Part shown: positions 1,901 through 39,325 of the stretch, piece after piece | How the letters are laid out: the number at the start of each line of letters is the position of its first letter | How positions within the stretch are numbered: position 1 is the stretch's first letter | Source: Octopus bimaculoides | Taxonomy: Eukaryota | Direction of reading: 5' to 3' | Assembly (NCBI RefSeq): GCF_001194135.2 | Contig: NC_068987.1 | Span: 86,302,044 to 86,341,572, forward strand | Length of the DNA stretch: 39,529 nucleotides | The notes under the pieces: generated by a model | What the model was told of the DNA's origin: nothing | Seen by the model: only the letters and a program-made list of their open reading frames with translations | The model's database searches: none | Position numbers and translations under genes: made by a program

Positions 1901-1930
1901 TTATATAATAAATATATACGACGAGCTTCT

Positions 1931-2050
1931 TTTAGTTTCCGTCTACCAAATCAACTCACAAGGCATTGGTTGGTCCGAGGCTATAGTGGAAGACACTTGC
2001 CCAAGTTGCCACGCAGTGGGACGGAACCCGGAACTAACCCGATTGGGTTG
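1931..2050 (-). mobile_element. tRNA-derived SINE, family 2, partial copy
   Basis: Reverse complement (gttccgggttccgtcccactgcgtggcaacttgggcaagtgtcttccactatagcctcggaccaaccaatgccttgtgagttgatttggtagacggaaac) aligns with the copy at 33673-33830. Confidence 0.85.
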
Positions 2051-5551: not shown

Positions 5552-8115
5552 AAAAATAGATTTAGGCGTAATGTTTATGTAAATAATTAATTATTTTAAT
5601 TATCTGTTCAGTTGCGTAAAAAGATTAAAGGATATGTTGAAAATATATGCAAATCATAACTTTTATTCTCAGATAGGTCTAGCGTAATTAAATCAAGAAG
5701 ATTTTTTCTTATATGCATGTGTGCATGCATGTATGTCTCTGTCTGTCTCTGTGTTTATGTTTGTGTCTGTGTGTGCGCGTGTATGCATGTGTATGTGTAT
5801 AACTTGCTTAGGCAGCAAAAGTATATTGTGTTTTTCCTAGTATGCGGAACAATAATCTTTGAAGCATCTTTGGAAGATGATTCTTAATTACATTTCTGTT
5901 TACGTAACAGAATATTCGGTTGGTTTTACATTCTGTGCTAAAATAATTTCAAATAAATAACTATATATTAAACATATATGAATTATTCTGACGTATACTG
6001 GGTTGAATAAAAATATAATGTTACAGACATATATATATATATATATANNNNNNNNNNNNNNNNNNNNNNNNNNNNNNNNNNNNNNNNNNNNNNNNNNNNN
6101 NNNNNNNNNNNNNNNNNNNNNNNNNNNNNNNNNNNNNNNNNNNNNNNNNNNNNNNNNNNNNNNNNNNNNNNNNNNNNNNNNNNNNNNNNNNNNNNNNNNN
6201 NNNNNNNNNNNNNNNNNNNNNNNNNNNNNNNNNNNNNNNNNNNNNNNNNNNNNNNNNNNNNNNNNNNNNNNNNNNNNNNNNNNNNNNNNNNNNNNNNNNN
6301 NNNNNNNNNNNNNNNNNNNNNNNNNNNNNNNNNNNNNNNNNNNNNNNNNNNNNNNNNNNNNNNNNNNNNNNNNNNNNNNNNNNNNNNNNNNNNNNNNNNN
6401 NNNNNNNNNNNNNNNNNNNNNNNNNNNNNNNNNNNNNNNNNNNNNNNNNNNNNNNNNNNNNNNNNNNNNNNNNNNNNNNNNNNNNNNNNNNNNNNNNNNN
6501 NNNNNNNNNNNNNNNNNNNNNNNNNNNNNNNNNNNNNNNNNNNNNNNNNNNNNNNNNNNNNNNNNNNNNNNNNNNNNNNNNNNNNNNNNNNNNNNNNNNN
6601 NNNNNNNNNNNNNNNNNNNNNNNNNNNNNNNNNNNNNNNNNNNNNNNNNNNNNNNNNNNNNNNNNNNNNNNNNNNNNNNNNNNNNNNNNNNNNNNNNNNN
6701 NNNNNNNNNNNNNNNNNNNNNNNNNNNNNNNNNNNNNNNNNNNNNNNNNNNNNNNNNNNNNNNNNNNNNNNNNNNNNNNNNNNNNNNNNNNNNNNNNNNN
6801 NNNNNNNNNNNNNNNNNNNNAATAAAAGATTAAACTTTATATATATATACAAAGTTTTAATTTTTAAAAATCTTTAACGATATTATAAACTATAAAGATT
6901 AATTGTTAATCAAATATTATTAATCAAAAATAATCGAAAATATATCAACACTATTCAAATCGAAGTTCTAATATTATGTTGAAATGAAACTATAACTTCT
7001 AAATAATTTAGTGCTAAATAAGTTATCTATTAAAAATAATCTATAAAGAACCAAATGAATAGTATAAAAAACAAGAATACATATTAGTTTCAAATAGTAG
7101 AAAATCTTTAGCAAAGTTAAAAAACAGTACTTATCCAAATTTTTTTAAGCCACGTGCAATAATTTTGTAAATAATCACCGAGTATATAGTATTTATCTAC
7201 AGATATTACCATTTTATTAGTTTTTGATTTACGAAACAAATATGAGATGGAATACATCAATATATTTGATTATTATCTCACCTATGATTTTACATCTGTA
7301 AAATATCATATATTTAACTGGTATGTCGTGACGGATAATGTGCAACGCTTGATGAAAGAAAAAAGCTAAACAACGTGTTTAAAATAATAAGGGCCATTAT
7401 ATACCATAACCAGCAATTTGTCACAAAGCATTCATAAAACCTACAGAAACGTAAATTCACGAATATATATATGTATATATGCATGTATGTATGTANNNNN
7501 NNNNNNNNNNNNNNNNNNNNNNNNNNNNNNNNNNNNNNNNNNNNNNNNNNNNNNNNNNNNNNNNNNNNNNNNNNNNNNNNNNNNNNNNNNNNNNNNNNNN
7601 NNNNNNNNNNNNNNNNNNNNNNNNNTATGAGTGTGTGTGGATATATGTATATATGCATGTATGTATGTACGTATGTACGTATGTACGTATGTATGTATGT
7701 ATGTAGGTAAATGTATATGAATGTAAATATGTGGAATTTGCTTATAAGAAATAGTGAAAAGCAATTAAGACGACGAAGAATATAATTACTTTCATTCAGC
7801 TGAAGATGTTTGTCATTATTTCGACAACAAAGCTGGTGATGAATTTACCCAATGAAGTGCGTTACTTAGTGTATAATGGCGTCAGTAGCTCCCAGAGGCA
7901 ATGTGAAAAGAGAATAATTTTCATAGCTGCATTGCAAAATGCAACTAACAGTTTTAGTTTCATACAGCAATTGTATCATTTAATGACAATAGTCTATGGA
8001 AACAAGAAGAATCAGAATAATTTTATCTCGACAACGTGGTAACATTTCTAACTAATTTTCATGAAAATTAGCTTTCATATAGGTACGATATTGTAATCGA
8101 AGGCGAAAATTCAGG

Positions 8116-8260: not shown

Positions 8261-9666
8261 TGGAAGAAGCTTTTAGTATATACAAATGCAGTGTGACCCA
8301 AAAGTAGATTTACCGTTATTCAACTATTTCTTTCGCATTCATATATTAACAGTTTAGATCTTAATTATATAAAAAAAAAAATGAAATCATCATTCTATGC
8401 TAATTCAGTTAATTTTGTCAAGCTCTCTTTTCAGTTGGTAAGATAGAAATTGGAATGTAATAAAATATTTTAAAACAAATTTAAAGTGCCTTCATGATAA
8501 CAGTAAACCTTCAGCCTTGGCCAAGTTATTAGGACACTCCAATGTTTATATATNNNNNNNNNNNNNNNNNNNNNNNNNNNNNNNNNNNNNNNNNNNNNNN
8601 NNNNNNNNNNNNNNNNNNNNNNNNNNNNNNNNNNNNNNNNNNNNNNNNNNNNNNNNNNNNNNNNNNNNNNNNNNNNNNNNNNNNNNNNNNNNNNNNNNNN
8701 NNNNNNNNNNNNNNNNNNNNNNNNNNNNNNNNNNNNNNNNNNNNNNNNNNNNNNNNNNNNNNNNNTATATATATATATATATATGTATGTATATATATAT
8801 AACCAAAATAAGCAACATTTACTGACATTTCAGTAAATTTTCTGTATTTTTGTGCAGCCGAAGATTGCTCTGTATTTTATATTTAATGTAATGCTCACTT
8901 TGCTTAAATAAATTGAGTCACATGAAATGATCGTACTGCATTAATCTTGAATATCCTTGTTGCTTATTTTGATTTTAATCACCTTATTTTGGAACTGTTT
9001 GGATAATACCATACTTCATTCTGGTGCCTAAACTTAAGTACCATATTCACCTTGAGTCTATATCTATCTATATATATACGTATGTTTTGCAACTGGTCAT
9101 TATATTGTTACCAATTATATAATTCTTTATCTTTTCATAATCGAAGTTTGCTTGTAATAGAATATTCATTAAAAAACTTTCACAAGTATTTTCTCTCAAA
9201 TATTCGCCGTATCTATGTGCAGTTATCATACTTTAATTATCACTGATTGTGCATTTATTAACATATGTTACGATAACATTCAAAAATACATGTTGCGCAT
9301 TTGTGAGACTCTTTTCAATTGCTTTTACTGTTGCTTGCTCTTTAGAATGCCGAGTGATTTGTAAAATAAAATAAAACAGTCAAATCAGTGATGAAATAGT
9401 TGATTTGTTTAAGAAATATACACTAATCTACTTGGCATAATTATAATTAAAAAACGAATTCATATAGCTCATAACACGTAATAATGACACGTATTATATC
9501 TTCCGAAAAGTGACTGATTAATAAACTCTTTGAAATTATGTATCTAGAAAAACAGAAAACAAATTTAGCAATTTTTCTCAAATTAATTTTAAATAAATGT
9601 TTTCAGATTGTAACCTGGTACTTGCTTTCACTTGTTCAGGATTGAAACAATATATCTGCAATACTA

Positions 9667-10087
9667 AGGCAGCGAGCTGGCAGAAACGTTAGCACGACGG
9701 GCGATATGCTTAGCGGTATTTCGTCTGCTGTGACGTTCTGAGTTCAAATTCCGCCGAGGTCGACTTTGTCTTTCATCCTTTCGGGGGTCGATAAATTAAG
9801 TACCAGTTATGCACTGGGGTCGATGTAATCGACTTAATCCCTTTGTCTGTCCTTGTTTGTCCCCTCTATGTTTAGCCCCCTCTATGTTTAGCCCCCTCTA
9901 TGTTTAGCCCCCTGTGGGCAATAAAGGAATAAGTATTTCGTCTGTCTTTAAGTTCTGAGTTCAAATTCCGCCGAGGTCGAAGTTTGCCTTTCATCATTTA
10001 GGGGTCGAAAAATTAAGTACCAGTTGCGTACCGGGGTCGATCTAATCCCTTCCCAAAATGTTGGGCCTTGTGCCTAGAGTAGAGAAT
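9667..10087 (+). mobile_element. Composite tRNA-derived SINE (family 1): full monomer plus second 5'-truncated body, bounded by an 18-bp TSD
   Basis: Head ggcagcgagctggcagaaacgttagc and B-box-like ttctgagttcaaattcc occurring twice. TSD AATATATCTGCAATACTA at 9649-9666 and 10088-10105. Confidence 0.9.
9861..9908 (+). repeat. 16-bp unit (CCCCTCTATGTTTAGC) x3 inside the SINE tail
   Basis: Three exact tandem copies; the homologous tail at 20125-20170 has a single copy. Confidence 0.95.
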
Positions 10088-13000: not shown

Positions 13001-13530
13001 AATATGAACGAAAAGATTGTTTTAAAAATATAAATTGTATAAAAGCAAAATCGAAGAGTTAAGACTTAAATGTAATTCTTTTACAACAATAAGCCTTAAA
13101 TGGATAAAACATTATTTGAGATGTGCCTATTATTTCAAGAATTATAGCCAATTTCAGAAAACTAATGTCATTTTTAGATTATAAACACACAAAACAAAAT
13201 CGTTCACAGATTCTTTGCAGCTGAATATAATGACCATTTTCAAGCAAGTTTTGCATTAATTTTACTTTATTTGAAATATTGGTAATAAATTTAACCAGTA
13301 ATTTCTAAAGCTGTCTCATTAAAATAATTCACATCTTGTGGAGACTCTAAACATGCTTCATTAAGGATGCTTTCAAACACGACAATCCCTTATCCAATAA
13401 AATAATTCACAAAAAATATATTGCAAATAATGTAAACTATATTGATCGCACATAAACAATGCATGCTTTTTGATTATTCATCGAATGTGCTGCAGGATAG
13501 CGCCTAAGGAAACACCCTAGTAACGCTGGG

Positions 13531-13579
13531 TGTTAGAAATAATATACTGCTGTTAGAAATAATATACTGCTGTTAGAAA
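13531..13579 (+). repeat. 20-bp tandem duplication (TGTTAGAAATAATATACTGC) x2.4
   Basis: Exact copies at 13531-13550 and 13551-13570, partial copy to 13579. Confidence 0.95.
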
Positions 13580-14297
13580 ACTAACCATAGCGCGCTTGAA
13601 ATTTAGGATTTGTTTTGGGTGGTGAGGAATATTATACTCAATATGAGCACCGTCTCATATTCTATAACCGTAGCCCACACTTATTCCACTCCTCCAGACT
13701 AACACCATAATAACTGATTGGGAGCTAAATTTATTAGACATCATAATGATTCCTCTCGCATCACACGCTAACATATTCAGACGTGTAAAGACATATTAAA
13801 CACTGGTGTTCTAGATAGAGTGAAAATAGACAGCAGGATCGTTTTCACTGTTATTCCGATGTCAGACGTCTGCTCCATTATGTCTGGTGTAGGGCCAGCA
13901 CACACATATCTTTTAGGATATTATCTCTACCATCTATTTTTAATTAATCTGTCTTACAAATATATGTTATGCTTCCTCAATTCCGGATAAAAGTGTTCTT
14001 CCCTGCGTAATGAATGCAGGGAAACGGATTTGTATAAAATCTCGTTCTGGTTGTGGGTAATTGAATTTTTCTTTCGTTTCTCTGATCATTGGAACTTTGG
14101 ACAGGGTCAGTTGAAGATTTTAAATTTGTAGTTTACGAATTACTTCCTTTTTTCATATTGTTTCGTGTAATTCTAAATTGGTATGTAATATATAAAACAC
14201 AAAAGAAATGTGTTTCAATCAGCAAGTTCTAGGAAGTAGAACATTTTTGGTCTCCTTTTGTAATTCGATTCGATCCCCTGGTGAAATTGTGACATAC

Positions 14298-14361
14298 CGT
14301 CCTGCGAGCTCGAGCGGCTACCGTAGCGAGTGTCGCTGGTCATTCTCCGTGGCCACGCCAT
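14298..14361 (-). CDS. Putative first coding exon, MAWPRRMTSDTRYGSRSSSQD(G), phase-1 donor; product unknown
   Basis: ATG at 14361-14359, 21 open codons, then GACG|gtatgt donor (intron starting 14297), inside a CpG-rich island. No downstream exon identified. Confidence 0.3.
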
Positions 14362-14472
14362 CCGGGTCCACACGGAGGAGTGCGAGTGAGCGTCCGTCTT
14401 TTTTCTAGGATATGTGGCCGATCATTCCATCCACTCCGCCTTTTGCTGCTTTGCTCCCCCCACCCATTCTTC
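14333..14472 (+). repeat. Left arm of a long imperfect inverted repeat (partner 15356-15494), in a GC/CpG island
   Basis: Hand alignment to the reverse complement of the right arm: about 110/128 identities over 14333-14460 (one 1-nt gap); perfect 33-bp block 14408-14440 vs 15388-15420. Confidence 0.95.
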
Positions 14473-15303
14473 TCAATTTCTTTTGTTATTTTTCATCTTT
14501 TTAGTAACATTTCCCACTGTATGTTCTTTAGAAGGGCAGGTAATTTTTATAGAGTATATTTATAAAGTCAAGTTATGGTTGTTTACAACAAATATTGATT
14601 ATAAAACACAGAGCTAACAATGTGAAAAACAGCAGCAAAATTGTGGAAACCTTTCTAGACTTGGTGATTGTCAGAGAATGAAAGGCTCAAACGAAAATGG
14701 ATACCCATCAACTGGAATGAAATACTTGTTTTGATAATGTGTATCGCGAAATCAAATTAGCAATTTGCAAGTCACAAACAGTCATAATAGTAGACTCAAT
14801 GAGACGGTGTGTATAAGATTTGGCAGATAGGTTTGTACATTTGAAAAGATTTGGTGTATAGATATTTCGTAGCGAGATATTGTGTATTCTTGCTTTGATT
14901 TGAAGATTGTTATGAGTGACTAGTGTAGAAAATAGAATTGAGAAACTATGTGTGCCTGTATTGTTTGGATTAGGCTGGTACATGTTTAACGATATTAGCC
15001 TTAATACACTGCAAGGTGTTAGTAAAACTATTCTGAGAAGAGATTATAATTTCTATAATTATATTGAGAAGCTAGGATAAACTTCGTAAAGTTTTTGTTG
15101 AGATATTTCAAAGTATACGAAGATGTGTACATTTGAAACCTGCATACCGAGCATTTGTACAACAGAAAACCTGAACTGCTAATGTTTTATCATCCCAGAG
15201 TTCGTTAGACTGTAGGGCTTTCATTTCTAATTGCTACATTTGTTGGTGTATTTCAAGGTATACATTACAGTCCATTAAAGTTGAGCAAAATGAGGTTTAA
15301 ATC

Positions 15304-15315
15304 GAGCATGCGCAG
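15304..15315 (-). promoter_or_regulatory. NRF1-like motif (CTGCGCATGCTC on the minus strand) just upstream of the right GC island
   Basis: Plus strand GAGCATGCGCAG partly matches the NRF1 consensus (TGCGCATGCGCA) and lies about 40 bp before the island. Motif match only. Confidence 0.25.
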
Positions 15316-15355
15316 TTTGTTATGACAATCACTTGTAATTGAGTTTGTAATTCGT

Positions 15356-15494
15356 GAAGAAAGTGGCGGGAGAGCAAAGCCACGAATGGCGGAGTGGATG
15401 GAATGATCGGCCACATATCCCAGAACAAGAAGTATGCTCACTCGGACCCCTGGGTGTGGACTCGAATGGCGTGGTCACGGAGAATGACCAGCGA
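15356..15494 (-). repeat. Right arm of the inverted repeat, in a second GC/CpG island (about 15350-15680)
   Basis: Reverse complement tcgctggtcattctccgtgaccacgccattcgagtccacac...ggatatgtggccgatcattccatccactccgcc matches 14333 onward. Confidence 0.95.
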
Positions 15495-15603
15495 AACTGC
15501 ACCAGAAAGACGCGTCACCTCCAACGAACAGACCAGGATTGCTGGAGCACAGAGAAATCAGGAACTACACAACTCCAGAGTCAACACCTTCCCTTCGGGA
15601 TGA
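15466..15603 (+). CDS. Short ORF paralogous to the 14361 exon, MAWSRRMTSETAPERRVTSNEQTRIAGAQRNQELHNSRVNTFPSG; may be non-functional
   Basis: Same ATG context as the left arm; in frame with ORF-track entry 15394..15603. No equivalent donor after codon 21. Confidence 0.2.
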   Translation: MAWSRRMTSETAPERRVTSNEQTRIAGAQRNQELHNSRVNTFPSG

Positions 15604-16915
15604 CAAGCCATAGCCAGGCACACTGTGCCTTATCTGATTCTCTCATGTGATGACCTTGTCATCACAGACAACAACGGACGAACTACTGATATCAGTATAA
15701 GTAAACATTGATGTTCTACCTATCTGAAATCTCGATGAGGAAACTTCGTCGTTTGTTAAACGTGTGGCCTGCTATAATATCTGCGCATATTCTATTTAAA
15801 TGGAATGAAATGAATATAACAGCTCACACAACATGTGATATGTGTTTTTCTAGTGGTTTACGTTATGTTTTTTTTTCCCGAAGGAGTCAAAATATACTCG
15901 CTGATTATATAATTTACTGGAGTTTAACGAATCTTATCCAAAGCAATATGTTGATAAGTTACCCTGCACGCATTTCCCATTCAGCGGAGAAAGACTGTCG
16001 ACAACAACATGTTACACAATGTTTATTGTAGTGAGAATCATAATTGATAAAACTTTCTTGAAATTCCTCTGTGAATTAGATTGTATTGCGCTGGTTATTT
16101 GATAAAGCATACGTTCCTTTGCTACATACAGCTATAGAGATTTTCAGGTGAAGATCATAAACAATCAGGTCTACTATTGATGCGTGTATGACTTATGGCA
16201 CGTTGCGTGCACTCGTGTGTATGCGTGTGTTTGTGTGAGTGAGTATGAGAGTGCGTGTGCGTATATGTTTGTGTGCGTGTGCGTGTGCGTGTCCATGTGT
16301 GTGTATGCATATCATGTGAATTACATACTTATATAAAGGAAAATTAGCAATCTTTTTTTTCGCGTTGGCAGGAACTGCGTCATTTCTAACATTATAACTC
16401 AGATGAAAATAACCTCTCACCACTAGTGTTTTGATATACGACAGCTGACAAAAAAAATCTAGGATAAATAAATGTAAACACTTACATAGTAGAAGCGTTG
16501 ACAATATATCAGAACGCTTTCTTATACATGACCAAAGAGATAATTGTTCCGATAAATCACAAGGATTGTTTCTCCACGTTTTGTCATAATACTGTCGGTG
16601 TCGCACAATGCTGTCGCAAGGCATATTTATGTATGTTTATATTTGTACATCTACCAACAACCTGTGCCATTTCCATTATGCCTTTTCCTTATTTTGTCCT
16701 TGGTGATCGTTTGTGTATATGTTAGTCATCGTCAAATATGGTCACTCAATTATCCCAGCATTTGTTTTACTAAAGGCGCCACCCAAATAAACATCCCTAT
16801 TAATAATTATGATGAACTTTGGTGGATAACTGATGAGGAATAGAGGTTGCCAACGTCTTGTGTGTGACTTTTCTGTGTGTTCTGTTGTTGTCCATTTGTA
16901 CAATATATTTTACCC

Positions 16916-16952
<37 letters not shown>

Positions 16953-17215
16953 NNNNNNNNNNNNNNNNNNNNNNNNNNNNNNNNNNNNNNNNNNNNNNNN
17001 NNNNNNNNNNNNNNNNNNNNNNNNNNNNNNNNNNNNNNNNNNNNNNNNNNNNNNNNNNNNNNNNNNNNNNNNNNNNNNNNNNNNNNNNNNNNNNNNNNNN
17101 NNNNNNNNNNNNNNNNNNNNNNNNNNNNNNNNNNNNNNNNNNNNNNNNNNNNNTTAAGTTTCACAGTATTAAACATATCAATGAGTTCATGAACCTTGGT
17201 TCTTTTCCCTAAAAC

Positions 17216-17259
<44 letters not shown>

Positions 17260-18267
17260 CATGTTATAGTCCTCTTCCTGCATAGAGAAATAGGGATACT
17301 TTCTTCTAAAATACTGCAGAGAATGCAGAGTAATCCCGAAAAGGAATATACCAATGAAATGTGCCTAAAAATCGCTCGTTAACAAACATTCTCGTGCGGG
17401 TGTAGAGTCATTAACGTACTACGCATTTGCTGATGAAAGTGGTTTTACAGCAAAGAACATTATAATCTACACAGAGTAAATGAATGACGTTTTTTACTGA
17501 ATATTTAATCCACTTCGCGATAAGTGAATTATATGTCGTGTGTTTTAGCAATTAGAGCTAATTTCTAGTTTGTGTTAATTTAACGATGAGTATTTACCAT
17601 CAAAATAAGTGTCAGCGTACGTCGGCAAATTTAATGACAATTCCTTTTAAATTTCTTAAGTGTTTACAGTGATTAAAATATCGTTTATTTAAAACAAAAG
17701 AATATATACATTGTTTTGATACTTATTTTTTGAAAAATTATGTACACATTTCAGCGCCCCGGGATGGCCGTAGATCTCGTGCTGAACACTAGTAAAAGAT
17801 AAAAGTCCTATAGTAAAAGCGAATTTTCTCCGAATTAATATTATAAAAATTTGAAGCCAATATTAAAATTCCCAATTTCAAAAGTATCCCTGCAGAATTC
17901 TACTAGGCTTTTAATACAAAAACATAAAGAGAAAAACAGATAGTCACAGATAGAGAGAAAGAGAGAGGTGAAGAGAGTGAGAGAGAGAGAGAGAGATGAA
18001 GAGAGNNNNNNNNNNNNNNNNNNNNNNNNNNNNNNNNNNNNNNNNNNNNNNNNNNNNNNNNNNNNNNNNNNNNNNNNNNNNNNNNNNNNNNNNNNNNNNN
18101 NNNNNNNNNNNNNNNNNNNNNNNNNNNNNNNNNNNNNNNNNNNNNNNNNNNNNNNNNNNNNNNNNNNNNNNNNNNNNNNNNNNNNNNNNNNNNNNNNNNN
18201 NNNNNNNNNNNNNNNNNNNNNNNNNNNNNNNNNNNNNNNNNNNNNNNNNNNNNNNNNNNNNNNNNNN

Positions 18268-18301
<34 letters not shown>

Positions 18302-18763
18302 GATGTGCGTTCGTGACATAGTCCGACAGATATAAGAAAGGTCATATGCGTACGTGAATGAGAGAGAAACTGAGCGAAGGCAAGATGAAAAAGATGTATA
18401 AATGGAGAAGAAAAAAATAGTATTTGATTTTTGAATGCTGTTGTAACTCTTACTAGCACTTCTACAAATATATCACTTCATTTTGACTTTCACTATTTCT
18501 ACTCTCCCGTATTGACTCCCAATGTTTTAACCCACAGTGACACAGAATCTGATTCTTTTTATATTTTTCTTTTTTAACTTATAGAATCTATGAAATTTTG
18601 TGCAAAATTTAAAGCATTTATTTCAGAATTGGTGACATTATCTCAATGTAAACAACCTTTCGCTCATTTCATCAACTTTACCGCCAGTAATGTCTCTATT
18701 GCATAATCAAAAATATCCTCTGGCCTTTTTCTTGTTTCCTCTTTTTCTTTGTATTGCAGCCTT

Positions 18764-18800
18764 TCTTCTTCTTCTTCTTCTTCTTCTTCTTCTTCTTCTT

Positions 18801-18851
<51 letters not shown>

Positions 18852-18874
18852 ATAATAATAATAANNNNNNNNNN

Positions 18875-18913
<39 letters not shown>

Positions 18914-18988
18914 CACCACTACTATCACCACCACCACTACTACTACCACCACCACCACCACCACCACCACCACTACTACTACTACAAC
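18764..18988. repeat. Compound trinucleotide array (CTT)n-(CTA)n-(AAT)n-(ACC/ACT)n
   Basis: Direct reading; includes a 10-N gap. Confidence 0.95.
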
Positions 18989-19544: not shown

Positions 19545-19940
19545 CACATATAGTCTGGATGTCGAAGCTGTCCGGTCAGTACAGGGATATCTCGGCTGCT
19601 GTTTTCAGCCGTTTACGGTCTCTCACAATTTCTATGTGTTCAAATATGTGCTTTGAAAGCAATATTTGACAGCTTTAGTTCTTATTTCTAGCATTGTATG
19701 TGCTCTAACAGCCTCTGTAATATTTAATTACAAAATTTTGCTACGCTACTACCTACATTAATTTTATACACACACATACACACAGACACAGCGTGCGCAC
19801 ACAATCTCACATACATATATATGTATATATATATGTGTGTGTGTGTATATATATATGTATATCTATCTATGTATATCATACATACACACACACATTGACA
19901 CATACACACACACACACTCACACACACACAGGCACACACA

Positions 19941-20171
19941 GGCAGCGAGCTGGCAGAAACGTTAGCACGCCGGGCGAAATGCTTAGCTGTATTTCGTCTG
20001 CCGCTACGTTCTGAGTTCAAATTCCACCGAGGTCGACTTTGCCTTTCATCCTTTCGGGGTCGATTAAATAAGTGCCAGTTACGCACTGGGGTCAATATAA
20101 TCGACTTAATCCGTTTGTCTGCCTTTGTTTGTCTCCTCTGTGTGTAGCCCCTTGTGGGTAGTAAAGAAATA
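19941..20171 (+). mobile_element. tRNA-derived SINE family 1, near full length, young-looking
   Basis: ggcagcgagctggcagaaacgttagcacgccgggcgaaatgcttag...ttctgagttcaaattccaccgaggtcgac...gtagccccttgtgggtagtaaagaaataa; close match to 9667-9933; inserted in a (CA)n tract. Confidence 0.92.
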
Positions 20172-20670
20172 ACACACGCACACACACAAATACACACANN
20201 NNNNNNNNNNNNNNNNNNNNNNNNNNNNNNNNNNNNNNNNNNNNNNNNNNNNNNNNNNNNNNNNNNNNNNNNNNNNNNNNNNNNNNNNNNNNNNNNNNNN
20301 NNNNNNNNNNNNNNNNNNNNNNNNNNNNNNNNNNNNNNNNNNNNNNNNNNNNNNNNNNNNNNNNNNNNNNNNNNNNNNNNNNNNNNNNNNNNNNNNNNNN
20401 NNNNNNNNNNNNNNNNNNNNNNNNNNNNNNNNNNNNNNNNNNNNNNNNNNNNNNNNNNNNNNNNNNNNNNNNNNNNNNNNNNNNNNNNNNNNNNNNNNNN
20501 NNNNNNNNNNNNNNNNNNNNNNNNNNNNNNNNNNNNNNNNNNNNNNNNNNNNNNNNNNNNNNNNNNNNNNNNNNNNNNNNNNNNNNNNNNNNNNNNNNNN
20601 NNNNNNNNNNNNNNNNNNNNNNNNNNNNNNNNNNNNNNNNNNNNNNNNNNNNNNNNNNNNNNNNNNNNNN

Positions 20671-22125: not shown

Positions 22126-24363
22126 AAAAGCAAATTTTTTCCTACTTCTACGGCTAATCTCATTGGCCAGACTCGACAACACCGTTCTACATCCGCCGGT
22201 GTCCAATCTAAACCATTCCTTTTTACTCTGTCTCTCTCTCTCCCCAAACCTCATCGCCCAGATGTAATTAAAATCAAAGAAATCAAAACCTAAAACAATT
22301 TACGATTCATTGGCCCCTAGATCATCCACACGTGTAAATCAAAATAAAAAAAAATGCTCTCTTTCTTTATGTGCGNNNNNNNNNNNNNNNNNNNNNNNNN
22401 NNNNNNNNNNNNNNNNNNNNNNNNNNNNNNNNNNNNNNNNNNNNNNNNNNNNNNNNNNNNNNNNNNNNNNNNNNNNNNNNNNNNNNNNNNNNNNNNNNNN
22501 NNNNNNNNNNNNNNNNNNNNNNNNNNNNNNNNNNNNNNNNNNNNNNNNNNNNNNNNNNNNNNNNNNNNNNNNNNNNNNNNNNNNNNNNNNNNNNNNNNNN
22601 NNNNNNNNNNNNNNNNNNNNNNNNNNNNNNNNNNNNNNNNNNNNNNNNNNNNNNNNNNNNNNNNNNNNNNNNNNNNNNNNNNNNNNNNNNNNNNNNNNNN
22701 NNNNNNNNNNNNNNNNNNNNNNNNNNNNNNNNNNNNNNNNNNNNNNNNNNNNNNNNNNNNNNNNNNNNNNNNNNNNNNNNNNNNNNNNNNNNNNATATAT
22801 ATTCCAACGTAGAAGTCTTAATTATAATTACCTTAAAACTTGTTTTAAATGTTAACAGAAGCGAGGTATGCAATTATATTTTGTGCTTAGTAATACGTCT
22901 CTTAACTAACTAAGGATATTCGCTATTAGTCAACTAATGACTGTAATAAAGGCATTAAATTGATTCAGCTGTAGGTATAATTGCAATGCATGAGAAAGTA
23001 CATTACTATATCTTTGATTCCCGATTTTAATTTGCTAGCGTTTGTTCTAAAGAGTATCAATATATGCAAATGTGATTTGCGGTTCATCGTACTAATAGCT
23101 TGATATTAATCAATGGATGTGATCGCAACGTATAACTTGTCATGTTCTCTCTGTAGCTAGGATACTGAAATCTAATTTTCCTTGAACATCACACTGACTT
23201 ACAGCACAATCTATTAGCGAAAGTAGATGCTGGGAATTTCCCGTGAGTTACCTTACAGTGTACTGATGAATTGATGTCGGTTTTTGGATTAAATTATTGA
23301 GTCAGATGTGTTATGTTGTTGAGTCTTCTAAAAATGTTACAGGAAGTGCATGTGTCCATTTGGAGTTTAGGCAACACTGGAGTACAGAACTTATCTATTG
23401 AAATCACGTGAAGAATATAACTTCGGTATTTAACCAAATTATTAACAAATATCTGTGTACGAAATTTCACTGTCATCTCATCTCCTGACACAAAACAGCG
23501 AGTGTTTGTCATCAGTTTCTGTAGAAGTTGCATGCGATACCAAGAGTAATCTAGGGTAGAGTTATATAGCAAATTCTCTTTTCTATTAAGTAGTTATTTC
23601 TGGTCTTCGAGCGAACCAATCAGTCAGTAATTCTGCAACTCTTATATAGCTACCCAGAGCAGTAAATGCATTATATCATTCATCATCAGAGTATGTCACA
23701 TATTGCTTTTAATTTTAGATGTTTTCAACAATAATCACAGCCAAGTACAAAATGCAGTTTGCTGGGAAACTAAATTCAAATTTGTTAAATAAAAGAAAAT
23801 AAAGTTGATTTTGTCGAACCACCTGCATGAGTCCATGAATTGATAGGTAAATTCATTTTAGAGTTTTCCATTTCGTAGCAGCTGCTTCAAAAGATACATG
23901 ATGCGTTTTTTTTTTCTTTTTTTTTTTGACAGATATCGGTTCATTGCTGAATCAAATATATCAGTTTTCGACTTTGGATTGCTTATTCTTTCTTCTTAGA
24001 GATGTATTTTGAAACCCGTAATCTACATTAATTGACGTCACAGTGCTGCCAGGATACGTGTTATCAGATCATAAAATTTGAACTTAAATCTCGACGTACA
24101 AAGTGCAAAATTAACGACGATATACATATTGTTCTAATGACATCTAAATAGGACGTCACTATAAATAATAAATATTCTTTTAGAACAATTCTCAACGTTG
24201 TGCAATTTATTTCATAAGATTAATATATACTTCAGAACCCCTTTTAAATCTCCTCCATTTCAATATAATGTTTATTAATTAGAAACGGAGCCATATTTCG
24301 CAACTTTTACATCTGAAGGGATTATATTTCTAACTCGAGCATCTGTTAATATAAACTCTCACT

Positions 24364-25037
24364 AAGGCGGTGAGCTGACAAAAGCGTTACCACGAAGGAC
24401 AAAATGCTTAGATTCATTCTGTCGCGCTTTATGTTCAGGGTTCAAATTTCGCGGAGTTCAACTCTGCCATTTATCCCTTCGAGATCAATAAAATAAGTAC
24501 CAGCTGAGTTCAGGGGTCGATATAATTGATTTACCCCCTCCGCTAAATTGCTGGCCTTGTGCTAAAAAATTAAAACTAATATTTTTTACGCTATTAAGGC
24601 GACAACATGACAGAATTGTTAGCGCGCCAAGAGCAAATGCTTAACCGTATTTCGTCCGTCTTTACGTTTGGAGTTAAAATCCATCCAGGTCGATTTTACG
24701 TTCCATCATTTCGTAATTAATAAAATAAGTGCCAGTACTAAAATCGATGTAACCGACATATCCTTCCTCTAAAATTGCTTGCCTTGTACCAGATTTTGGA
24801 ACCAATATTAACTATCATTAATGTAGCGAATCGGCAGAATCGTTAGCACGCCTCATAAAGTGATTAGCAGCATTTTCGTCCGTCTTTACGCTCCGCAAAG
24901 ATCAACCTAGCCTTTCAAATTTCGGGATCAATAAAATAAGTAACATTCAAGCTCTGGGGTCGATGTAATTGACTTGTTCCTTCCCTTGAAATTGCTGGCC
25001 TTGTGCCAAAATCAGAAACTAATATTATCTATCATTA
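24364..25037 (+). mobile_element. Head-to-tail trimer of degenerate SINE family 1 units (~225 bp each)
   Basis: Units start at about 24364, 24596 and 24820; each has a gttag/gttac head, a taaaataagt(a/g) block and an aaattgct(g/t)gccttgt tail. Confidence 0.85.
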
Positions 25038-26241: not shown

Positions 26242-26600
26242 CTAGTAGTAGTAGTAGTAGTAGTGGTAGTAGTAGTAGTAGTAATAGTAATAGAGATCNN
26301 NNNNNNNNNNNNNNNNNNNNNNNNNNNNNNNNNNNNNNNNNNNNNNNNNNNNNNNNNNNNNNNNNNNNNNAGAAAGAGGAGGGGAGAAAGAGGAGGGGAG
26401 AAAGAGGAGGGGAGAAAGAGGAGGGGAGAAAGAGGAGGGGAGATAGAGGAGAAAGGGGCAGCTCGTAGTAGCGAAAATAGTAATAACAAGAGCAGCAGTA
26501 GCAGCCGCAGTAGTAGTACATTTGGCAGTAGTAGTAGTAGTAGTTGTTGTTGTTGTAGTAGCGGCAGTAGTAGGCAGCAGCAGCAGCAGCAGCAGCGGCG
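26242..26600. repeat. Compound (TAG)n / 14-bp polypurine minisatellite / (TAG,GTT,CAG)n tract
   Basis: Five exact AGAAAGAGGAGGGG copies at 26371-26440 next to an N gap; (CAG)n at about 26575-26595. Confidence 0.92.
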
Positions 26601-27363
26601 GTGGCAGGCACCCGTTAGTCGTTCAATTAATTCATTAATCAGCTGGTTTCTCAGACTCTTTTATTCACCATTCGTAGCCACCTCAATGTCAGGCTCTCAT
26701 TCAGTCTGGCACTCTGGATCTAATTGTCTACATAACTCTACTACATAGATTAAAAATCTTTGCGAGTTGTGTGATTGATTAAGCGTGCATGATAGTGATT
26801 GTGAGAGGATTTTTGAAGTGCCCACTGTGTATATACGCATGCGCATGCATGTGTATATGCAAATGCGTAAGCCGGCGAATACACTCATTCTAGTCTCTTT
26901 TGTTTATAGACAGAAAATATTTCGATTGTTTTGACTGCTTTATAACTTTAAACCTCATTTATCTCATAACCCAAGGGAATTCACACTCATGGACAGTCGT
27001 CTACAATAGATTCTCAAACACAAATATGTCTGAGGAGGTGTATGGAGAGGCTGTGCATGTGTGAGAGTGTGTGTGTCTGTGTGTGTAAGGACGATGTGAA
27101 AACAGTTCACAATAAAATACATGATAGTCATTGCAAGGATCTCCATCGATCTCATATCCAGATAGTTACTAAAATAACTATACTGGCATGCATTCATACA
27201 CGCATAGACGTACTCGCACAAGAGAACAAACGCGCCCCTTATTAGTGGCTGTGATAGTGGAGTTTACTGCTTGCCTATTCGTTCGTCTTCCGTAATACCT
27301 ATATCTTCCAATATCCATTTTAAGGCTGAGTATGTGAAAGTGCCGATTTGTTATCTATATGTA

Positions 27364-27580
27364 AGGCGACGTACTGGAAGAAACGTTAGCACGCCAGGCG
27401 AAATGCTTAGCGGTATTTCATCTGTCTACATTCTGAGTTCGAACTCCACCGAGATCGACTTTGCCTTTCATCCTTTGGGTGTCGATAAATTGAGTTCCAA
27501 CCGCATACTGGGTTCGATCTAATCGACTGGCCCCCTCCCCCAAAATTTCGTGCCTTGTGCCTAGACTAGAAAAAGATATA
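27364..27580 (+). mobile_element. tRNA-derived SINE family 1 (B-type tail) with a 13-bp TSD
   Basis: aggcgacgtactggaagaaacgttagcacgccaggcgaaatgcttagcgg...ccttgtgcctagactagaaaaaga; TSD TTATCTATATGTA at 27351-27363 and 27581-27593. Confidence 0.92.
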
Positions 27581-27817
27581 TTATCTATATGTATATATTC
27601 TAGTATACCAGCATGTTTACCATTAGCATCATAGTAGAATAGCACCATCAGTAGTATATCAGTTTTTATTTTCTCTATATTACACACAGTGTCTTCAATT
27701 CTCTCAGCTAGATTTAGTTCGGTTTCTCCATGTAGGAAATACGCGCGCGTGTGTGTGTTTGTGCGTGTGTGTTGTGCGTGTGCACACGTTCAAGTATATG
27801 TATATTTAGTGATACCA

Positions 27818-27957
27818 AGAGAGAGACAGACAGACAGACAGAGAGAGACAGACAGACAGAGAGAGACAGACAGACAGAGAGAGACAGACAGACAGAGAGA
27901 GACAGACAGACAGAGAGAGACAGACAGACAGAGAGAGACAGACAGACAGACAGAGAG
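27818..27957. repeat. 18-bp higher-order microsatellite (AGAGAGACAGACAGACAG)n
   Basis: Direct reading; gives the RETDRQ repeats in the ORF track. Confidence 0.95.
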
Positions 27958-30900
27958 ATTCGTCTGTACATGTGTCTCTACATTGGCGTATTACATGAAC
28001 GTGTGCGTGATATTTTTATGAGAATTAACACATATGGAATATGGTATGGCATTGATATGTCCGTTTATTTGGGATGCGTGCTCTTAGCAGAAGCCCCAGT
28101 GCTGAAACAACTTTTAAAACACAGATGAATGTAGTTGATTCTGTGAACTACATGACTTCAACCGTTGCGCTGTAGACATTCTTGAAATCCCATTTCATTT
28201 GACCCATATTAATGTCGAAATGAATACATTCACACATACACAGACACACACGCAGATATGCACACATATTGGTGCTTTTCCTGAATATTACAATATATAT
28301 TTCATTCATTGTTATGAGAAACAAAGATTTAATAGAATTTAGAATTACTTTTGTGATATTGCATTGTCATATAAATATCATTTTAGTTCTTTGCTCTACC
28401 TCGACGGATAATATTTATATGTAGGAACTCATTTCATACCATCCGTGTTTCCGTCATAAAGTATTGTATTATACATCATAATAAATATTAATATGTCCGT
28501 CATCAAATATTATTCATGACTTTATCATTCATCAATGGACAAACATATATATGCACGTATAAATGTATATATTTATGTATATACATATATGTATGTGTGT
28601 GGGCCTCTGTGTGTGTGTGTGTGTTTGTGTGTGCCTGAGCATGTATGTCTAATACGTTGATAAATAATATATATATATATATTTANNNNNNNNNNNNNNN
28701 NNNNNNNNNNNNNNNNNNNNNNNNNNNNNNNNNNNNNNNNNNNNNNNNNNNNNNNNNNNNNNNNNNNNNNNNNNNNNNNNNNNNNNNNNNNNNNNNNNNN
28801 NNNNNNNNNNNNNNNNNNNNNNNNNNNNNNNNATATATATATTGTAAATTCAGCTTAATTTCGCTTCAGTTACAGTTTGAAAAGTTGTGATTACTGATTC
28901 GAATTTATCTCATCAAAAGTACAGTCAATGCTGAAATCTTTAGGAACGGAAACTAAAATCGACCTTTTAGCAAAAATTTGAAGTTACATAAATTTTCTTT
29001 GCAACCATGATGTTATTAGAGAGAGCTAAGCAAGAAAACCGGATAAATGTGTGTGTAAGTGTATGCGTGTACGTGTGAGAGCGAATGTGTGTATGCATAT
29101 TAAGACAGTGTTTTGTGCATTAGAATATAGTGCGAAATATTGGTTAACAGCAGAAATGATTTAGGAATTCTAAAGTAATACGCAATTATATTAACAGTCC
29201 ATGAGTAAATCTAGGAACCATGGAAATTTACTTTCCCAACAAATGAAGTATTTTTGATAAGATCATATGTACTACTAAGACTGTGATTCCAAACTATGGC
29301 CCCGTGGGAAACTGCTCGTATCCAAGCCGCACACAGCGTTCATCAATAGAAAGATTGGAATTTCTGCCACTTTCCCTGTCGAAATACTAAGCCCCTTTAA
29401 ATGAATGTCAAGCCGCTGATTACCCTGATGCAACGCCTTAGGCATAACCGACCCTCTCGGGGCATGTATGCTGCCAGTATAGACACCATCCTACAATCAT
29501 TGCCATTTATTGAAACCCCAAATCATTAATCAGTTTCCCGTATGTAAAGATAGATGCCACCAATCTGCTCAAACTCCATTTGGCACGCTCTAAATGAAAA
29601 CACTCAAATAAAACCTGCATCCTGCCAACATTTTCGCCGCAACTCATAGCACTAAGCATAAAGAAAAAACCTGATGTCATTTCTATCGTACTGCAATGAA
29701 TTGATCGCAGTTGGAAAATAGAAGGCATTATTTTTCTATCCAAGATTCAAAGTCACGATTCTGTCTCCAAAGATCAGACGAGGAGGGCAGTTTCGTACGC
29801 CCATGTGGATGTATATGCGTTAAGTGCTACTGTCTTTTGTTTACTAACACTTACTCAGACACATATGAACAAACACACATACATGTGTATGTGTGTATAT
29901 ATATATATATTCTTTACTTTTTTACATGTTTCATCCTTGTATGTTTATACATCCACTTTCCTTCAGAATAGTCAAACAATTGCAGTGCATTCTTGTTATT
30001 TGTCGGAAGCATTTATGATTAGATGTTTCCGCCAGTATGTTTGTTCATAAGGTGAGGTGAATAGCTTTTCGAAGGATTCTCCTACAATATTTCTTTCAGT
30101 ATATTATAGAAAAGCACTTTTGTTACACATTTTGTTCCGTTATGAGGCATAATGACCGATGAACACCATGAGCACTCATGCGGTCTTATTTATATAGTAA
30201 TCTCCTCTATTCAAAAGTGTGGCATACTTAAAAATACCTTTGAATATTAATGTTTCTTTGCTGTATTCTATTCCAGCAGTTAATTGTCTTTACCGCTACA
30301 TTTATCGTTTCCATAGTATTATCTCTACTTTTGTAAGATGACATATGTTTCGATGTGACCAACCAATCTGCTAAACATTTCGGCATTTAAATGTGTCTAA
30401 ATTGCTGGCAACTATATCATTTGCTGGTTAGGAATATTGTCTTGTATTCAAGTGTTGATTTTTTCACTTTCTAAGAATAAAGTCACGGTTTCTTCTACAG
30501 AATTTCCGTTCATTCATAAATTATGGATCTCTTGTATTCCATTATCGTTCAAAACGGCTACAAGGTTTAAAATGTTACAGAGTTCCTTGAAAATTTGTGT
30601 TGGGGCACGTTTTAAATGTCATTCTGTTGGCGTACTCAATAAGATATGAGTCTTCCTTTCTGTCATTTTCATATTAGTCCTGTTTCAATAATCGAAGGTG
30701 AGCCTTTCCTTGCGATATAAGTAAAATGCTGTATGCTTCCTTTCAACTCCTTTTCATTGGATCAACTGAGGTACTGGTTACTTTTGCTATGAAAACTCTA
30801 GCTGAGAAGATTAAATTCTTCAGCGTAGTGCCATTGGCGTAGCTTGTGCCAGCGAACGAGTTTTACGAAGTTCTTCTCACACCTATCATTTTTTCTGCCA

Positions 30901-33672: not shown

Positions 33673-34078
33673 GGCGCAGGAGTGACTATGTGGGTAAGAA
33701 GTTTGCTTTCCAACCACATGGTTCCGGGTACAGGCCCACTGCGTGGCACAGTGGGCAAGCTTCTCCTTTTATAGCCTCGGGCCGACCAAGAAGCCTTGTT
33801 AGTTGATTTGGTAGATGGTAACTGAAAAAAGCCCATCGAGTGTGTTTGTGTGTGTGCATGTGTGCGTGTATGTGTTTGTGCTTGCCCCACCGCCATCACT
33901 TGACAACCGATGATGGTATGTTCATGTCCCCCGTAACTTCGCGGATTGGCAAATGAGCTCGATAAAAATAAGTACTAGGTCAACAAAGAATAAGTTCTTG
34001 GGGTGATTTCTTCGACTAAAACCCTTCAACGTGATGCTCCAGCATGGCCGCGGTCAAATGGCTGAAACACGTAAAATA
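33673..34078 (+). mobile_element. tRNA-derived SINE family 2, long copy with an internal (GT)n tract
   Basis: Head ggcgcaggagtgactatgtgggtaagaag..ggttccgggtacaggcccactgcgtggcac; the 3' part (gataaaaataagtactagg..ggggtgatttcttcgact) resembles the family 1 central block; ends ccgcggtcaaatggctgaaac. Confidence 0.85.
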
Positions 34079-38478: not shown

Positions 38479-39325
38479 NNNNNNNNNNNNNNNNNNNNNN
38501 NNNNNNNNNNNNNNNNNNNNNNNNNNNNNNNNNNNNNNNNNNNNNNNNNNNNNNNNNNNNNNNNNNNNNNNNNNNNNNNNNNNNNNNNNNNNNNNNNNNN
38601 NNNNNNNNNNNNNNNNNNNNNNNNNNNNNNNNNNNNNNNNNNNNNNNNNNNNNNNNNNNNNNNNNNNNNNNNNNNNNNNNNNNNNNNNNNNNNNNNNNNN
38701 NNNNNNNNNNNNNNNNNNNNNNNNNNNNNNNNNNNNNNNNNNNNNNNNNNNNNNNNNNNNNNNNNNNNNNNNNNNNNNNNNNNNNNNNNNNNNNNNNNNN
38801 NNNNNNNNNNNNNNNNNNNNNNNNNNNNNNNNNNNNNNNNNNNNNNNNNNNNNNNNNNNNNNNNNNNNNNNNNNNNNNNNNNNNNNNNNNNNNNNNNNNN
38901 NNNNNNNNNNNNNNNNNNNNNNNNNNNNNNNNNNNNNNNNNNNNNNNNNNNNNNNNNNNNNNNNNNNNNNNNNNNNNNNNNNNNNNNNNNGTGTGTGTGT
39001 GTGTGAATATGAATCAATGCTTTCTTTCTTCCCCGCAGCATTCGGCAGTTTAGGGAAATCATTAATATCTTATTTGGATGAATCAACGCTGGCAGCCTCA
39101 GAAAAGCTCTCCATTTTTCAGGACAGATTACTATATTTTTTTTGTCAAATCAAACTTCAAAATCTGAAAATTCACACTTGAAGGATGAATTTTCGAGCGA
39201 AAAACTCGGTAAGGCGAAAGAAGATGTTGTTAACCAACTTTTAAACAAATATGAAATACAAATGCACATAAATAAACAAGAGAAATTGTTTGGACTTACG
39301 GGAAACGAAGCAACGACAGCCAAAC

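What the first reader, a model, noticed from the sequence alone, without database searches (positions are those of the whole stretch)
14333..15494. Two CpG islands forming a ~140-bp inverted repeat around an ~880-bp AT-rich spacer: potential long dsRNA hairpin
Seen: 14333-14472 is the reverse complement of 15356-15494 at about 84-86% identity by hand, with a perfect 33-bp block (14408-14440/15388-15420) and a perfect 19-bp block at the outer end. No direct TSD flanks it, and GC-rich sequence continues past both outer ends, which argues against a simple MITE. About half the mismatches are transitions, giving G-U or A-C pairs in RNA on either strand. Established: A-C mismatches in long duplexes are favoured ADAR sites, coleoid cephalopods edit extensively, and >30-bp perfect duplexes can be Dicer substrates. 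Inference: read-through of both arms would make an editing or endo-siRNA substrate at a promoter.
Basis: partly seen in the sequence, partly recalled or inferred. Interest (0 to 1): 0.72.

Follow-up and report, generated by a model that had tools for sequence, protein, structure and literature searches.

The report
Ordinary repeat-derived inverted repeat, octopus-like DNA
Two 150-base GC-rich segments do face each other as an imperfect inverted repeat across 870 bases, but they look like decayed transposon-type insertions, not paired promoters or a dedicated hairpin-RNA gene, so the locus is ordinary.

Summary
Bases 14329-14478 are the reverse complement of 15349-15498: 149 aligned positions, 23 mismatches, 2 one-base indels, 84.6% identity, blastn E about 1e-38. 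The perfect 33-bp and 19-bp blocks are present. No target-site duplication flanks the whole unit, and GC-rich sequence continues outward on both sides.

An RNA spanning both arms would fold into a stem of about 127 pairs (about -230 kcal/mol). Nothing shows that such an RNA exists.

The "CpG island/promoter" label is not diagnostic. CpG observed/expected is 0.88 across the whole window, and the window's SINE copies make the same kind of GC/CpG-rich patch.

The mismatches show no sign of selection for pairing (14 of 23 are transversions) and no codon periodicity. No Rfam, tRNA or Pfam signal was found.

Each GC island is bracketed by its own short direct repeat, and an exact pol III A-box sits in the best-conserved block. 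My leading reading is two head-to-head SINE-like insertions that share a 150-bp module. A decayed TIR transposon and a local inverted duplication remain possible.

Published work finds no Dicer-2, siRNA-class Argonaute or endo-siRNA signature in molluscs, so the siRNA branch is disfavoured. Passive ADAR hyper-editing is plausible if the locus is transcribed, but that is generic in octopus.

Genome-wide copy number could not be tested.

The parts
14329..14478 (+). Left arm of the inverted repeat (150 bp, 56% GC)
15349..15498 (-). Right arm, the reverse complement of the left arm (150 bp, 54% GC, 84.6% identity)
14479..15348 (.). Spacer: 870 bp, 32.5% GC, no internal symmetry, no protein domain, no other copy in the window
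14408..14440 (.). Perfect 33-bp block; its partner is 15388-15420
   Evidence: P = 0.028 for a run this long given the overall divergence.
14333..14351 (.). Perfect 19-bp block near the outer end; its partner is 15476-15494
15387..15397 (+). Exact match to the pol III A-box consensus TRGCNNAGTGG (TGGCGGAGTGG). The left-arm counterpart on the minus strand has one mismatch at the first base.
   Evidence: 3 exact matches in the window against 0.21 expected. The other two lie in SINE-like repeats.
14262..14328 (.). Left outer GC-rich extension (55% GC), not homologous to the right extension. It contains a B-box-like GATTCGATCCC at 14267-14277.
   Evidence: The B-box-like match is not above chance.
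15499..15750 (.). Right outer GC-rich extension (46% GC), unique in the window. It contains three short palindromes (15616-15630, 15646-15666, 15684-15697).
14255..14261 (+). CTTTTGT, repeated at 14480-14486. These direct repeats bracket the left GC island and are a candidate target-site duplication (10/11 matches if extended to CTTTTGTAATT / CTTTTGTTATT).
   Evidence: null about 2%; 8 copies of the 7-mer in 36.3 kb.
15343..15348 (+). GTTTGT, repeated at 15751-15756. These direct repeats bracket the right GC island and are a weaker candidate target-site duplication.
   Evidence: 29 copies of the 6-mer in the window. Not significant on its own.

Best explanation
The locus is a selectively neutral inverted repeat derived from interspersed repeats. 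It is not a pair of promoters and not a dedicated hairpin-RNA gene.

The most likely anatomy is two separate short SINE-like insertions lying head to head, 870 bp apart. The left unit runs about 14262-14479 on the minus strand. The right unit runs about 15349-15750 on the plus strand. They share a 150-bp 5' module (the two arms) and then continue outward into different GC-rich bodies.

The arms differ by K2P 0.173, or about 0.087 per arm. On the published octopus transposon clock this corresponds to roughly 25 million years of neutral decay.

The locus makes double-stranded RNA only as a by-product. If a longer pol II transcript, such as an intron or a read-through RNA, covers both arms, they would pair into an imperfect stem of about 150 bp. 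That stem would be promiscuously deaminated by ADAR, like the very large class of nearby inverted pairs in octopus genomes. Production of siRNA is not expected.

Shown: the repeat itself, its divergence, the lack of any coding or RNA-family signal, the unrelated outer extensions, and the bracketing direct repeats.
Inferred: the SINE-like identity, the age, and everything about RNA.
For: - Each arm continues outward into GC-rich sequence (55% and 46% GC) that is not homologous between the two sides. Only 2.7% of 200-bp windows here reach 48% GC. This fits two modular elements better than one element inserted into random DNA.
- The left island is bracketed by CTTTTGT(A/T)ATT, matching 10/11. With the inner boundary fixed by the end of homology, the null is about 2%. 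The right island is bracketed by an exact GTTTGT where GC content falls.
- An exact pol III A-box lies inside the best-conserved block of the arms. The window has 3 exact matches against 0.21 expected, and the other two are in recognisable SINEs.
- GC/CpG-rich patches of 200-350 bp in this window are mostly SINE copies.
- A SINE reading frame from the window matches an Octopus bimaculoides protein.
- Octopus genomes are about 66% repeats and 11.6% SINEs. About 900 SINE families have recently active copies (PMC13282606).
- 14 of the 23 mismatches are transversions that break pairing. Only 4-6 G-U pairs form in the predicted stem, so there is no sign of selection to keep a hairpin.
- The arms show no Rfam hit, tRNA, protein domain or structure of their own.
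- The per-arm distance of about 0.087 sits on a published burst of transposon activity at JC 0.09, about 25 My.
Against: - No third copy of the arms, extensions or spacer exists in the 39.5-kb window, even by profile search at E <= 10. Membership of a dispersed family is therefore not demonstrated, and genome-wide copy number could not be measured.
- Homology extends about 38 bp upstream of the A-box, which is unusual for a tRNA-derived SINE head.
- There is no convincing B-box in the arms. ARAGORN finds a tRNA-like fold only at a threshold where 26-32% of shuffled sequences also score.
- Neither unit has a recognisable 3' tail.
- The right-hand direct repeat is not significant on its own.
- The two oppositely oriented units carry similar flanks on the same strand, and an exact 11-mer TTTGTAATTCG occurs only at 14257 and 15344. 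This model does not explain either fact.
Confidence: 0.42

Rival explanations
1. One decayed non-autonomous DNA transposon (1170 bp, 14329-15498) with 150-bp terminal inverted repeats. It would have inserted into a pre-existing GC-rich repeat whose two halves now form the outer extensions. The RNA consequences are the same as in the best explanation: dsRNA only as a passive by-product.
For: - The two arms begin and end at the same positions, and the outermost 19 of 20 bases are nearly perfect.
- There is no coding capacity.
- The per-arm distance of about 0.087 coincides with the published burst of TIR and Helitron elements at JC 0.09, about 25 My (PMC13282606).
- A nested insertion would explain GC-rich sequence on both sides with a single event.
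Against: - No target-site duplication of 2-12 bp at or near the arm ends.
- The termini do not fit TA|CAGT (Tc1/mariner) or an 8-bp hAT-type duplication when read directly from the sequence.
- Each GC island has its own bracketing direct repeat, which a single element does not predict.
- No second copy in the window.
- The spacer is plain AT-rich sequence.
Confidence: 0.22
2. A local inverted duplication that is not a transposon. About 150 bp of one GC-rich element was copied in reverse orientation 870 bp away by replication template switching or ectopic gene conversion, and has drifted since.
For: - Only two copies exist in 39.5 kb, and they lie close together.
- There is no target-site duplication around the whole unit.
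- Homology ends abruptly at both ends of the arms.
Against: - The copy would have had to land next to a second, unrelated GC-rich patch, when only 2.7% of windows are that GC-rich.
- No junction microhomology in inverted orientation was seen.
- The bracketing direct repeats of each island are not predicted.
Confidence: 0.15
3. One reading: a functional hairpin-RNA locus. A transcript through both arms serves as a dedicated ADAR editing substrate or as a precursor of endogenous siRNAs that regulate a nearby promoter.
For: - The predicted stem is long and stable, with helices of 33-38 bp.
- Octopus has the highest hyper-editing signal among the animals surveyed (PMC5625713).
- The 33-bp perfect block is mildly longer than expected (P = 0.028).
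Against: - Arm identity is only 84.6%, and 14 of the mismatches are pair-breaking transversions.
- No transcript, promoter or small-RNA evidence is available.
- Molluscs lack Dicer-2 and siRNA-class Argonautes and show no endo-siRNA signature (PMC11114477; PMC12479628).
- No Rfam family matches.
- The CpG-island argument fails.
Confidence: 0.04
4. Two diverging paralogous promoters or first exons. Each arm would be the 5' end of a transcript running outward, so the arms would never be in one RNA and no hairpin would form.
For: - GC-rich sequence continues outward from both arms.
- GT-donor-like sites lie outward of both, read directly from the sequence: GGACG|GTATGT on the minus strand near 14299, and AA|GTAAAC on the plus strand near 15700.
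Against: - No reading frame is conserved between the arms, and mismatches show no codon periodicity.
- No protein domain or homologue was found.
- Donor-like hexamers are common by chance.
- The GC patches look like the window's SINEs.
Confidence: 0.03

Closest known systems
Inverted pairs of SINEs in one transcript (the inverted-Alu type of ADAR hyper-editing substrate)
   Same: Two diverged copies of about 150 bp lie in opposite orientation within 2 kb. They are predicted to pair into a long imperfect duplex with A-C and G-U mismatches. Octopus is reported to be exceptionally rich in such pairs and in hyper-editing (PMC5625713; PMC9989829).
   Different: Membership of a dispersed SINE family is not shown: there is no third copy in the window and no genome to search. 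Only a 150-bp module is shared, and the rest of each unit differs. Transcription and editing are untested. Only about 41 bp reach the >95% identity used in the published survey of such pairs.
MITE, foldback or other non-autonomous TIR DNA transposons (including palindromic Harbinger elements of Xenopus)
   Same: It has terminal inverted repeats, no coding capacity, an AT-rich interior and an age matching the octopus TIR burst. Such elements fold into dsRNA and are edited in frog (PMC5625713).
   Different: No target-site duplication, no second copy seen, and 1170 bp is large for a MITE. GC-rich unrelated sequence abuts both ends, and each GC island has its own flanking direct repeat.
Drosophila hairpin-RNA (hpRNA) genes that yield endo-siRNAs through Dicer-2 and AGO2 (from my own knowledge: Okamura et al. 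2008; Czech et al. 2008)
   Same: A genomic inverted repeat with a loop that could form a long intramolecular duplex.
   Different: The arms are short and only 84.6% identical. The pathway proteins and the siRNA signature are reported absent in molluscs. There is no evidence of a transcript or of targets.

Membership tests
Non-autonomous TIR DNA transposon / MITE | Terminal inverted repeats | tested here: met
   150-bp arms, 84.6% identical, E = 6e-39.
Non-autonomous TIR DNA transposon / MITE | Target-site duplication directly flanking the inverted repeats | tested here: not met
   No 4-12-bp direct repeat at the arm ends with +/-20 bp of slack. The best result is an off-register AGCGA.
Non-autonomous TIR DNA transposon / MITE | Many dispersed copies with the same internal sequence | not testable with these tools
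   No other copy in the 39.5-kb window. k-mer scans of metagenome, prokaryote-genome and viral collections gave nothing, or 20-mer chance hits only. No octopus assembly is available.
Non-autonomous TIR DNA transposon / MITE | No transposase; small size | tested here: inconclusive
   No Pfam domain in six frames of 13400-16900. At 1170 bp it exceeds the usual MITE size but is acceptable for a deletion derivative.
Pair of SINE copies (inverted-Alu-like) | Internal pol III promoter (A and B boxes) or a tRNA-like head | tested here: inconclusive
   Exact A-box at 15387-15397, with 3 matches in the window against 0.21 expected. No B-box in the arms, and the B-box-like site at 14267 is at chance level. 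ARAGORN is negative at thresholds with a low false-positive rate.
Pair of SINE copies (inverted-Alu-like) | Each copy flanked by its own target-site duplication | tested here: inconclusive
   Left island: CTTTTGTAATT / CTTTTGTTATT, 10/11 matches, null about 2%. Right island: GTTTGT / GTTTGT, not significant alone.
Pair of SINE copies (inverted-Alu-like) | Membership of a dispersed multi-copy family | not testable with these tools
   The arms are unrelated to the three SINE-like families seen in the window. The genome is not available.
Pair of SINE copies (inverted-Alu-like) | 3' tail (A-rich or a short tandem repeat) | tested here: not met
   The outer ends read ...GGATCGAATCG on the minus strand and ...GAAACTTCGTC on the plus strand, with no tail.
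hpRNA / endo-siRNA locus | Long, near-perfect intramolecular duplex | tested here: inconclusive
   A duplex is predicted (127 pairs, -230 kcal/mol). It is interrupted about every 6-7 bp outside one helix of 33-38 bp, and arm identity is 84.6%.
hpRNA / endo-siRNA locus | A transcript through both arms and 21-22-nt Dicer products loaded into an siRNA Argonaute | not testable with these tools
   No RNA data are available. The literature reports no Dicer-2, siAGO or endo-siRNA signature in molluscs.
ADAR hyper-editing substrate | A similar sequence in reverse orientation within about 2 kb | tested here: met
   The arms are 870 bp apart. About 41 bp (14403-14443) reach about 95% identity, which is borderline for the criterion of PMC5625713.
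ADAR hyper-editing substrate | Co-transcription of both arms and clustered A-to-G mismatches in RNA reads | not testable with these tools
CpG-island promoter | GC >= 50% and CpG observed/expected >= 0.6 over >= 200 bp, standing out from a CpG-depleted background | tested here: not met
   The thresholds are met formally (GC 0.52-0.54, observed/expected 1.0-1.2). The background is not depleted (0.88), and SINE copies give equal patches.
CpG-island promoter | Transcription start sites | not testable with these tools
   No expression data are available.

The most novel reading that the evidence does not exclude
The pair could be single-copy in the genome, conserved among Octopus species and transcribed as one hairpin RNA. 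That RNA would either be a dedicated ADAR target or decoy, or be cut into small RNAs. The second outcome would mean endogenous hairpin-derived small RNAs in a phylum reported to lack the canonical endo-siRNA machinery.
Probability: 0.03. Interest if true: 0.65.

Novelty: new member of a known kind. Interest (0 to 1): 0.13.

Why it matters
It matters little. If the locus is transcribed, it is one more of the very many nearby inverted sequence pairs that feed promiscuous ADAR editing in octopus neural tissue. It says nothing new about editing, RNA interference or promoters.

Its practical value is as a caution. In this AT-rich genome, which is not depleted in CpG, short GC/CpG-rich patches are usually SINE-type repeats and not CpG-island promoters. 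Inverted pairs of such patches are expected by the thousand.

The locus would only become interesting if it proved to be single-copy, conserved and processed into small RNAs.

Tried and rejected
- Copy number outside the window. Exact lookups of the arm ORF (98 aa), a spacer ORF and a neighbouring 143-aa ORF found nothing on record. A protein search with the arm ORF found no homologue. This is weak evidence, because a very abundant SINE from the window retrieved only one protein.
- k-mer scans with the conserved core. They returned 0 hits, or 20-21-nt chance matches only, in metagenome contigs, and 0 hits in prokaryotic genomes and viral contigs.
- Sampling octopus DNA through the one O. bimaculoides protein hit. 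The lookup failed, so no octopus DNA was obtained that way.
- They could not bound the copy number of non-coding DNA.
- Coding origin of the arms: rejected. No frame is conserved, mismatches show no codon periodicity, and Pfam is empty in six frames.
- Structured RNA gene: rejected. No Rfam hit near the arms even at E <= 10. The arms alone fold no better than shuffles.
- tRNA origin by ARAGORN: uninformative. Hits appear only at a threshold with 26-32% false positives.
- Extension of homology into the spacer or the outer flanks: none.
- Tc1/mariner TA|CAGT termini or a hAT-type 8-bp duplication: not supported on direct reading.

Full report
**Observation**

The window is a draft eukaryotic assembly: 11 runs of N, 34% GC, and many microsatellites. 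The reported inverted repeat is real. The repeat finder, Smith-Waterman and blastn all pair 14329-14478 with the reverse complement of 15349-15498.

A global alignment has 149 matched columns, 23 mismatches and two single-base indels. That is 84.6% identity and a K2P distance of 0.173. The blastn E-value is 6e-39.

The perfect 33-bp block (14408-14440 / 15388-15420) and the perfect 19-bp block (14333-14351 / 15476-15494) are both present. A perfect run of 33 or more has P = 0.028 given the overall number of differences, so it is only mildly unusual.

Transitions are 9 of 23, somewhat fewer than the "about half" reported. The spacer is 870 bp, 32.5% GC, and has no further symmetry. No target-site duplication flanks the pair. 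GC-rich sequence continues outward on both sides: 55% over 14262-14328 and 46% over 15499-15750, against 32-34% beyond.

**What it is not**

It is not coding. The arms have open frames, as GC-rich DNA tends to, but no frame is conserved between the arms. The mismatches show no three-base periodicity. Pfam finds nothing in six frames of 13400-16900, and the 98-aa arm ORF has no homologue.

It is not a known structured RNA. Rfam gives nothing near the arms even at E <= 10. ARAGORN finds no tRNA. Each arm alone folds no better than shuffled sequence.

It is not demonstrably a CpG-island promoter. CpG observed/expected is 0.88 for the whole window, so an observed/expected of about 1.0-1.2 in a 54% GC patch does not mark anything out. 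The other patches of that kind in the window are mostly copies of an interspersed SINE (9671-9920, 19861-20160, 27341-27570) or of another repeat (33721-33960).

**Surroundings and origin of the DNA**

The window carries at least three SINE-like families.
- One has copies of about 210 bp at 9667-9879, 9933-10047, 19940-20151, 24478-25037 and 27362-27581.
- A second has copies at 1919-2034 and 33721-33838.
- A third is a clear tRNA-derived head near 390-470.

A reading frame through the first family matches one database protein, an uncharacterised Octopus bimaculoides protein, at 68% identity. An octopod origin is therefore plausible but not proven. The arms, both outer extensions and the spacer have no other copy in the window, even by profile search at E <= 10.

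**Anatomy that bears on origin**

- The outer extensions are both GC-rich, yet they are not homologous to each other. Only 2.7% of 200-bp windows here reach 48% GC. Two unrelated GC-rich flanks are therefore unlikely for one element dropped into random DNA.
- The left GC island (14262-14479) is bracketed by CTTTTGTAATT and CTTTTGTTATT. With the inner boundary fixed by the end of homology, about 2% of random loci do as well.
- The right island (15349-15750) is bracketed by an exact GTTTGT at the point where GC content falls. This is weak on its own.
- An exact pol III A-box (TGGCGGAGTGG, 15387-15397) lies in the best-conserved block. The window has three exact matches against 0.21 expected, and the other two sit in recognisable SINEs.

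Several points count against a classical tRNA-SINE head. Homology runs 38 bp upstream of the A-box. There is no good B-box in the arms. The relaxed ARAGORN hits are at the false-positive rate.

One oddity remains. The exact 11-mer TTTGTAATTCG occurs only twice in the window, at the left edge of the left island (14257) and at the inner edge of the right arm (15344). I cannot explain it.

**Most likely explanation**

I rank the origins as follows.
- Two separate SINE-like insertions lying head to head and sharing a 150-bp module: about 0.42.
- One decayed TIR transposon nested in an older GC-rich repeat: about 0.22.
- A local inverted duplication that is not a transposon: about 0.15.

All three imply the same biology, a neutral piece of repeat-derived DNA. 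The per-arm distance of about 0.087 corresponds to roughly 25 My on the published octopus transposon clock (JC 0.09 is about 25 My; PMC13282606). The same paper reports that about 66% of the O. vulgaris genome is repeats, that 11.6% is SINEs, and that about 900 SINE families have recent copies. A repeat origin is therefore the default expectation.

**RNA consequences**

If a single RNA covers 14329-15498, the arms are predicted to pair on either strand. The prediction gives 127 arm-arm pairs, longest helices of 33 bp (plus strand) and 38 bp (minus strand), and about -230 kcal/mol for the duplex. The stem would carry 4-5 A-C and 4-5 G-U mismatches. Fourteen of the 23 differences are transversions that break pairing, so nothing suggests selection to keep the stem.

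Porath et al. report that octopus has the strongest hyper-editing signal among the animals they surveyed. They also report that 4.4e-3 of random 50-mers have a near-perfect inverted partner within 2 kb (PMC5625713). Zhang et al. conclude that young repeats are the main ADAR targets across animals (PMC9989829). By that yardstick this locus is a fairly degraded member of a very large class, because only about 41 bp reach 95% identity. Passive editing is plausible if the locus lies in a transcribed region. That is inference, and no RNA data were available.

The endo-siRNA alternative is disfavoured. Dicer-2 and siRNA-class Argonautes are reported lost in Mollusca, and no endo-siRNA signature was found in mollusc small-RNA libraries (PMC11114477). 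A mollusc survey that included O. bimaculoides found evidence of Dicer processing of long dsRNA elusive (PMC12479628).

**What could not be done**

It was out of reach. The DNA collections on hand are prokaryotic, viral or metagenomic, and they returned only chance 20-mers. Exact-protein lookups for window ORFs and for the one octopus hit returned nothing. The window itself only excludes a family as abundant as the main SINE.

**Verdict**

The locus is an ordinary instance of a known kind, and interest is low.

Noticed in passing
window 9667-9879, 9933-10047, 19940-20151, 24478-25037, 27362-27581: At least five or six copies of one SINE of about 210 bp, 68-90% identical to each other. It begins GGCAGCGAGCTGGCAGAAACGTTAGCACGCC and has a B-box-like GAGTTCAAATTCC. 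The copy at 9667 ends in a 16-bp tandem tail (CCCCTCTATGTTTAGC x3.3, 9861-9913). A reading frame through the SINE matches an uncharacterised Octopus bimaculoides protein at 68% identity.
   Followed up: partly
window 1919-2034 and 33721-33838: A second repeat family is present as an inverted pair 31.7 kb apart, about 80% identical. The copy at 33744-33754 carries an exact A-box.
   Followed up: partly
window about 390-470: A clear tRNA-derived SINE head: A-box TGGCGTAGTGG and B-box GAGTTCGATTT. ARAGORN calls it tRNA-Ser-like at an 80% threshold. It is a third SINE-like family and is unrelated to the arms.
   Followed up: partly
window 14257-14267 and 15344-15354: The exact 11-mer TTTGTAATTCG occurs only twice in the window, at the left edge of the left GC island and at the inner edge of the right arm, in direct orientation. 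No origin model I considered explains it.
   Followed up: partly
window 15616-15630, 15646-15666, 15684-15697: Three short palindromes lie within 90 bp of the right outer extension: GGCACA-C-TGTGCC; TGTGATGA-CCTTG-TCATCACA, an 8-bp stem; and a perfect 14-nt palindrome, TACTGATATCAGTA.
   Followed up: no
window 16207-16339: A GT-rich degenerate microsatellite (GTGTGCGTG-type units) gives a sub-threshold Rfam mir-297 match (32 bits against a gathering score of 90). This is almost certainly a low-complexity artefact.
   Followed up: no
window 18763-18979: Four different trinucleotide arrays lie back to back, (TTC)13, (CTA)17, (TAA)13 and (ACC)n, interrupted by a 10-N gap.
   Followed up: no
window 26371-26451 and 27818-27956: Two near-perfect minisatellites: a 14-mer AGAAAGAGGAGGGG x5.8 (98% matches) and an 18-mer AGACAGAGAGAGACAGAC x7.7 (97% matches).
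   Followed up: no
window 6048-6820, 7496-7625, 8554-8765, 16953-17153, 18006-18267, 18865-18874, 20199-20670, 22376-22794, 26299-26370, 28686-28832, 38479-38990: Eleven runs of N totalling 3210 bases, mostly next to AT or other microsatellites. This is a gapped short-read scaffold, so repeat content in the gaps is unknown.
   Followed up: no
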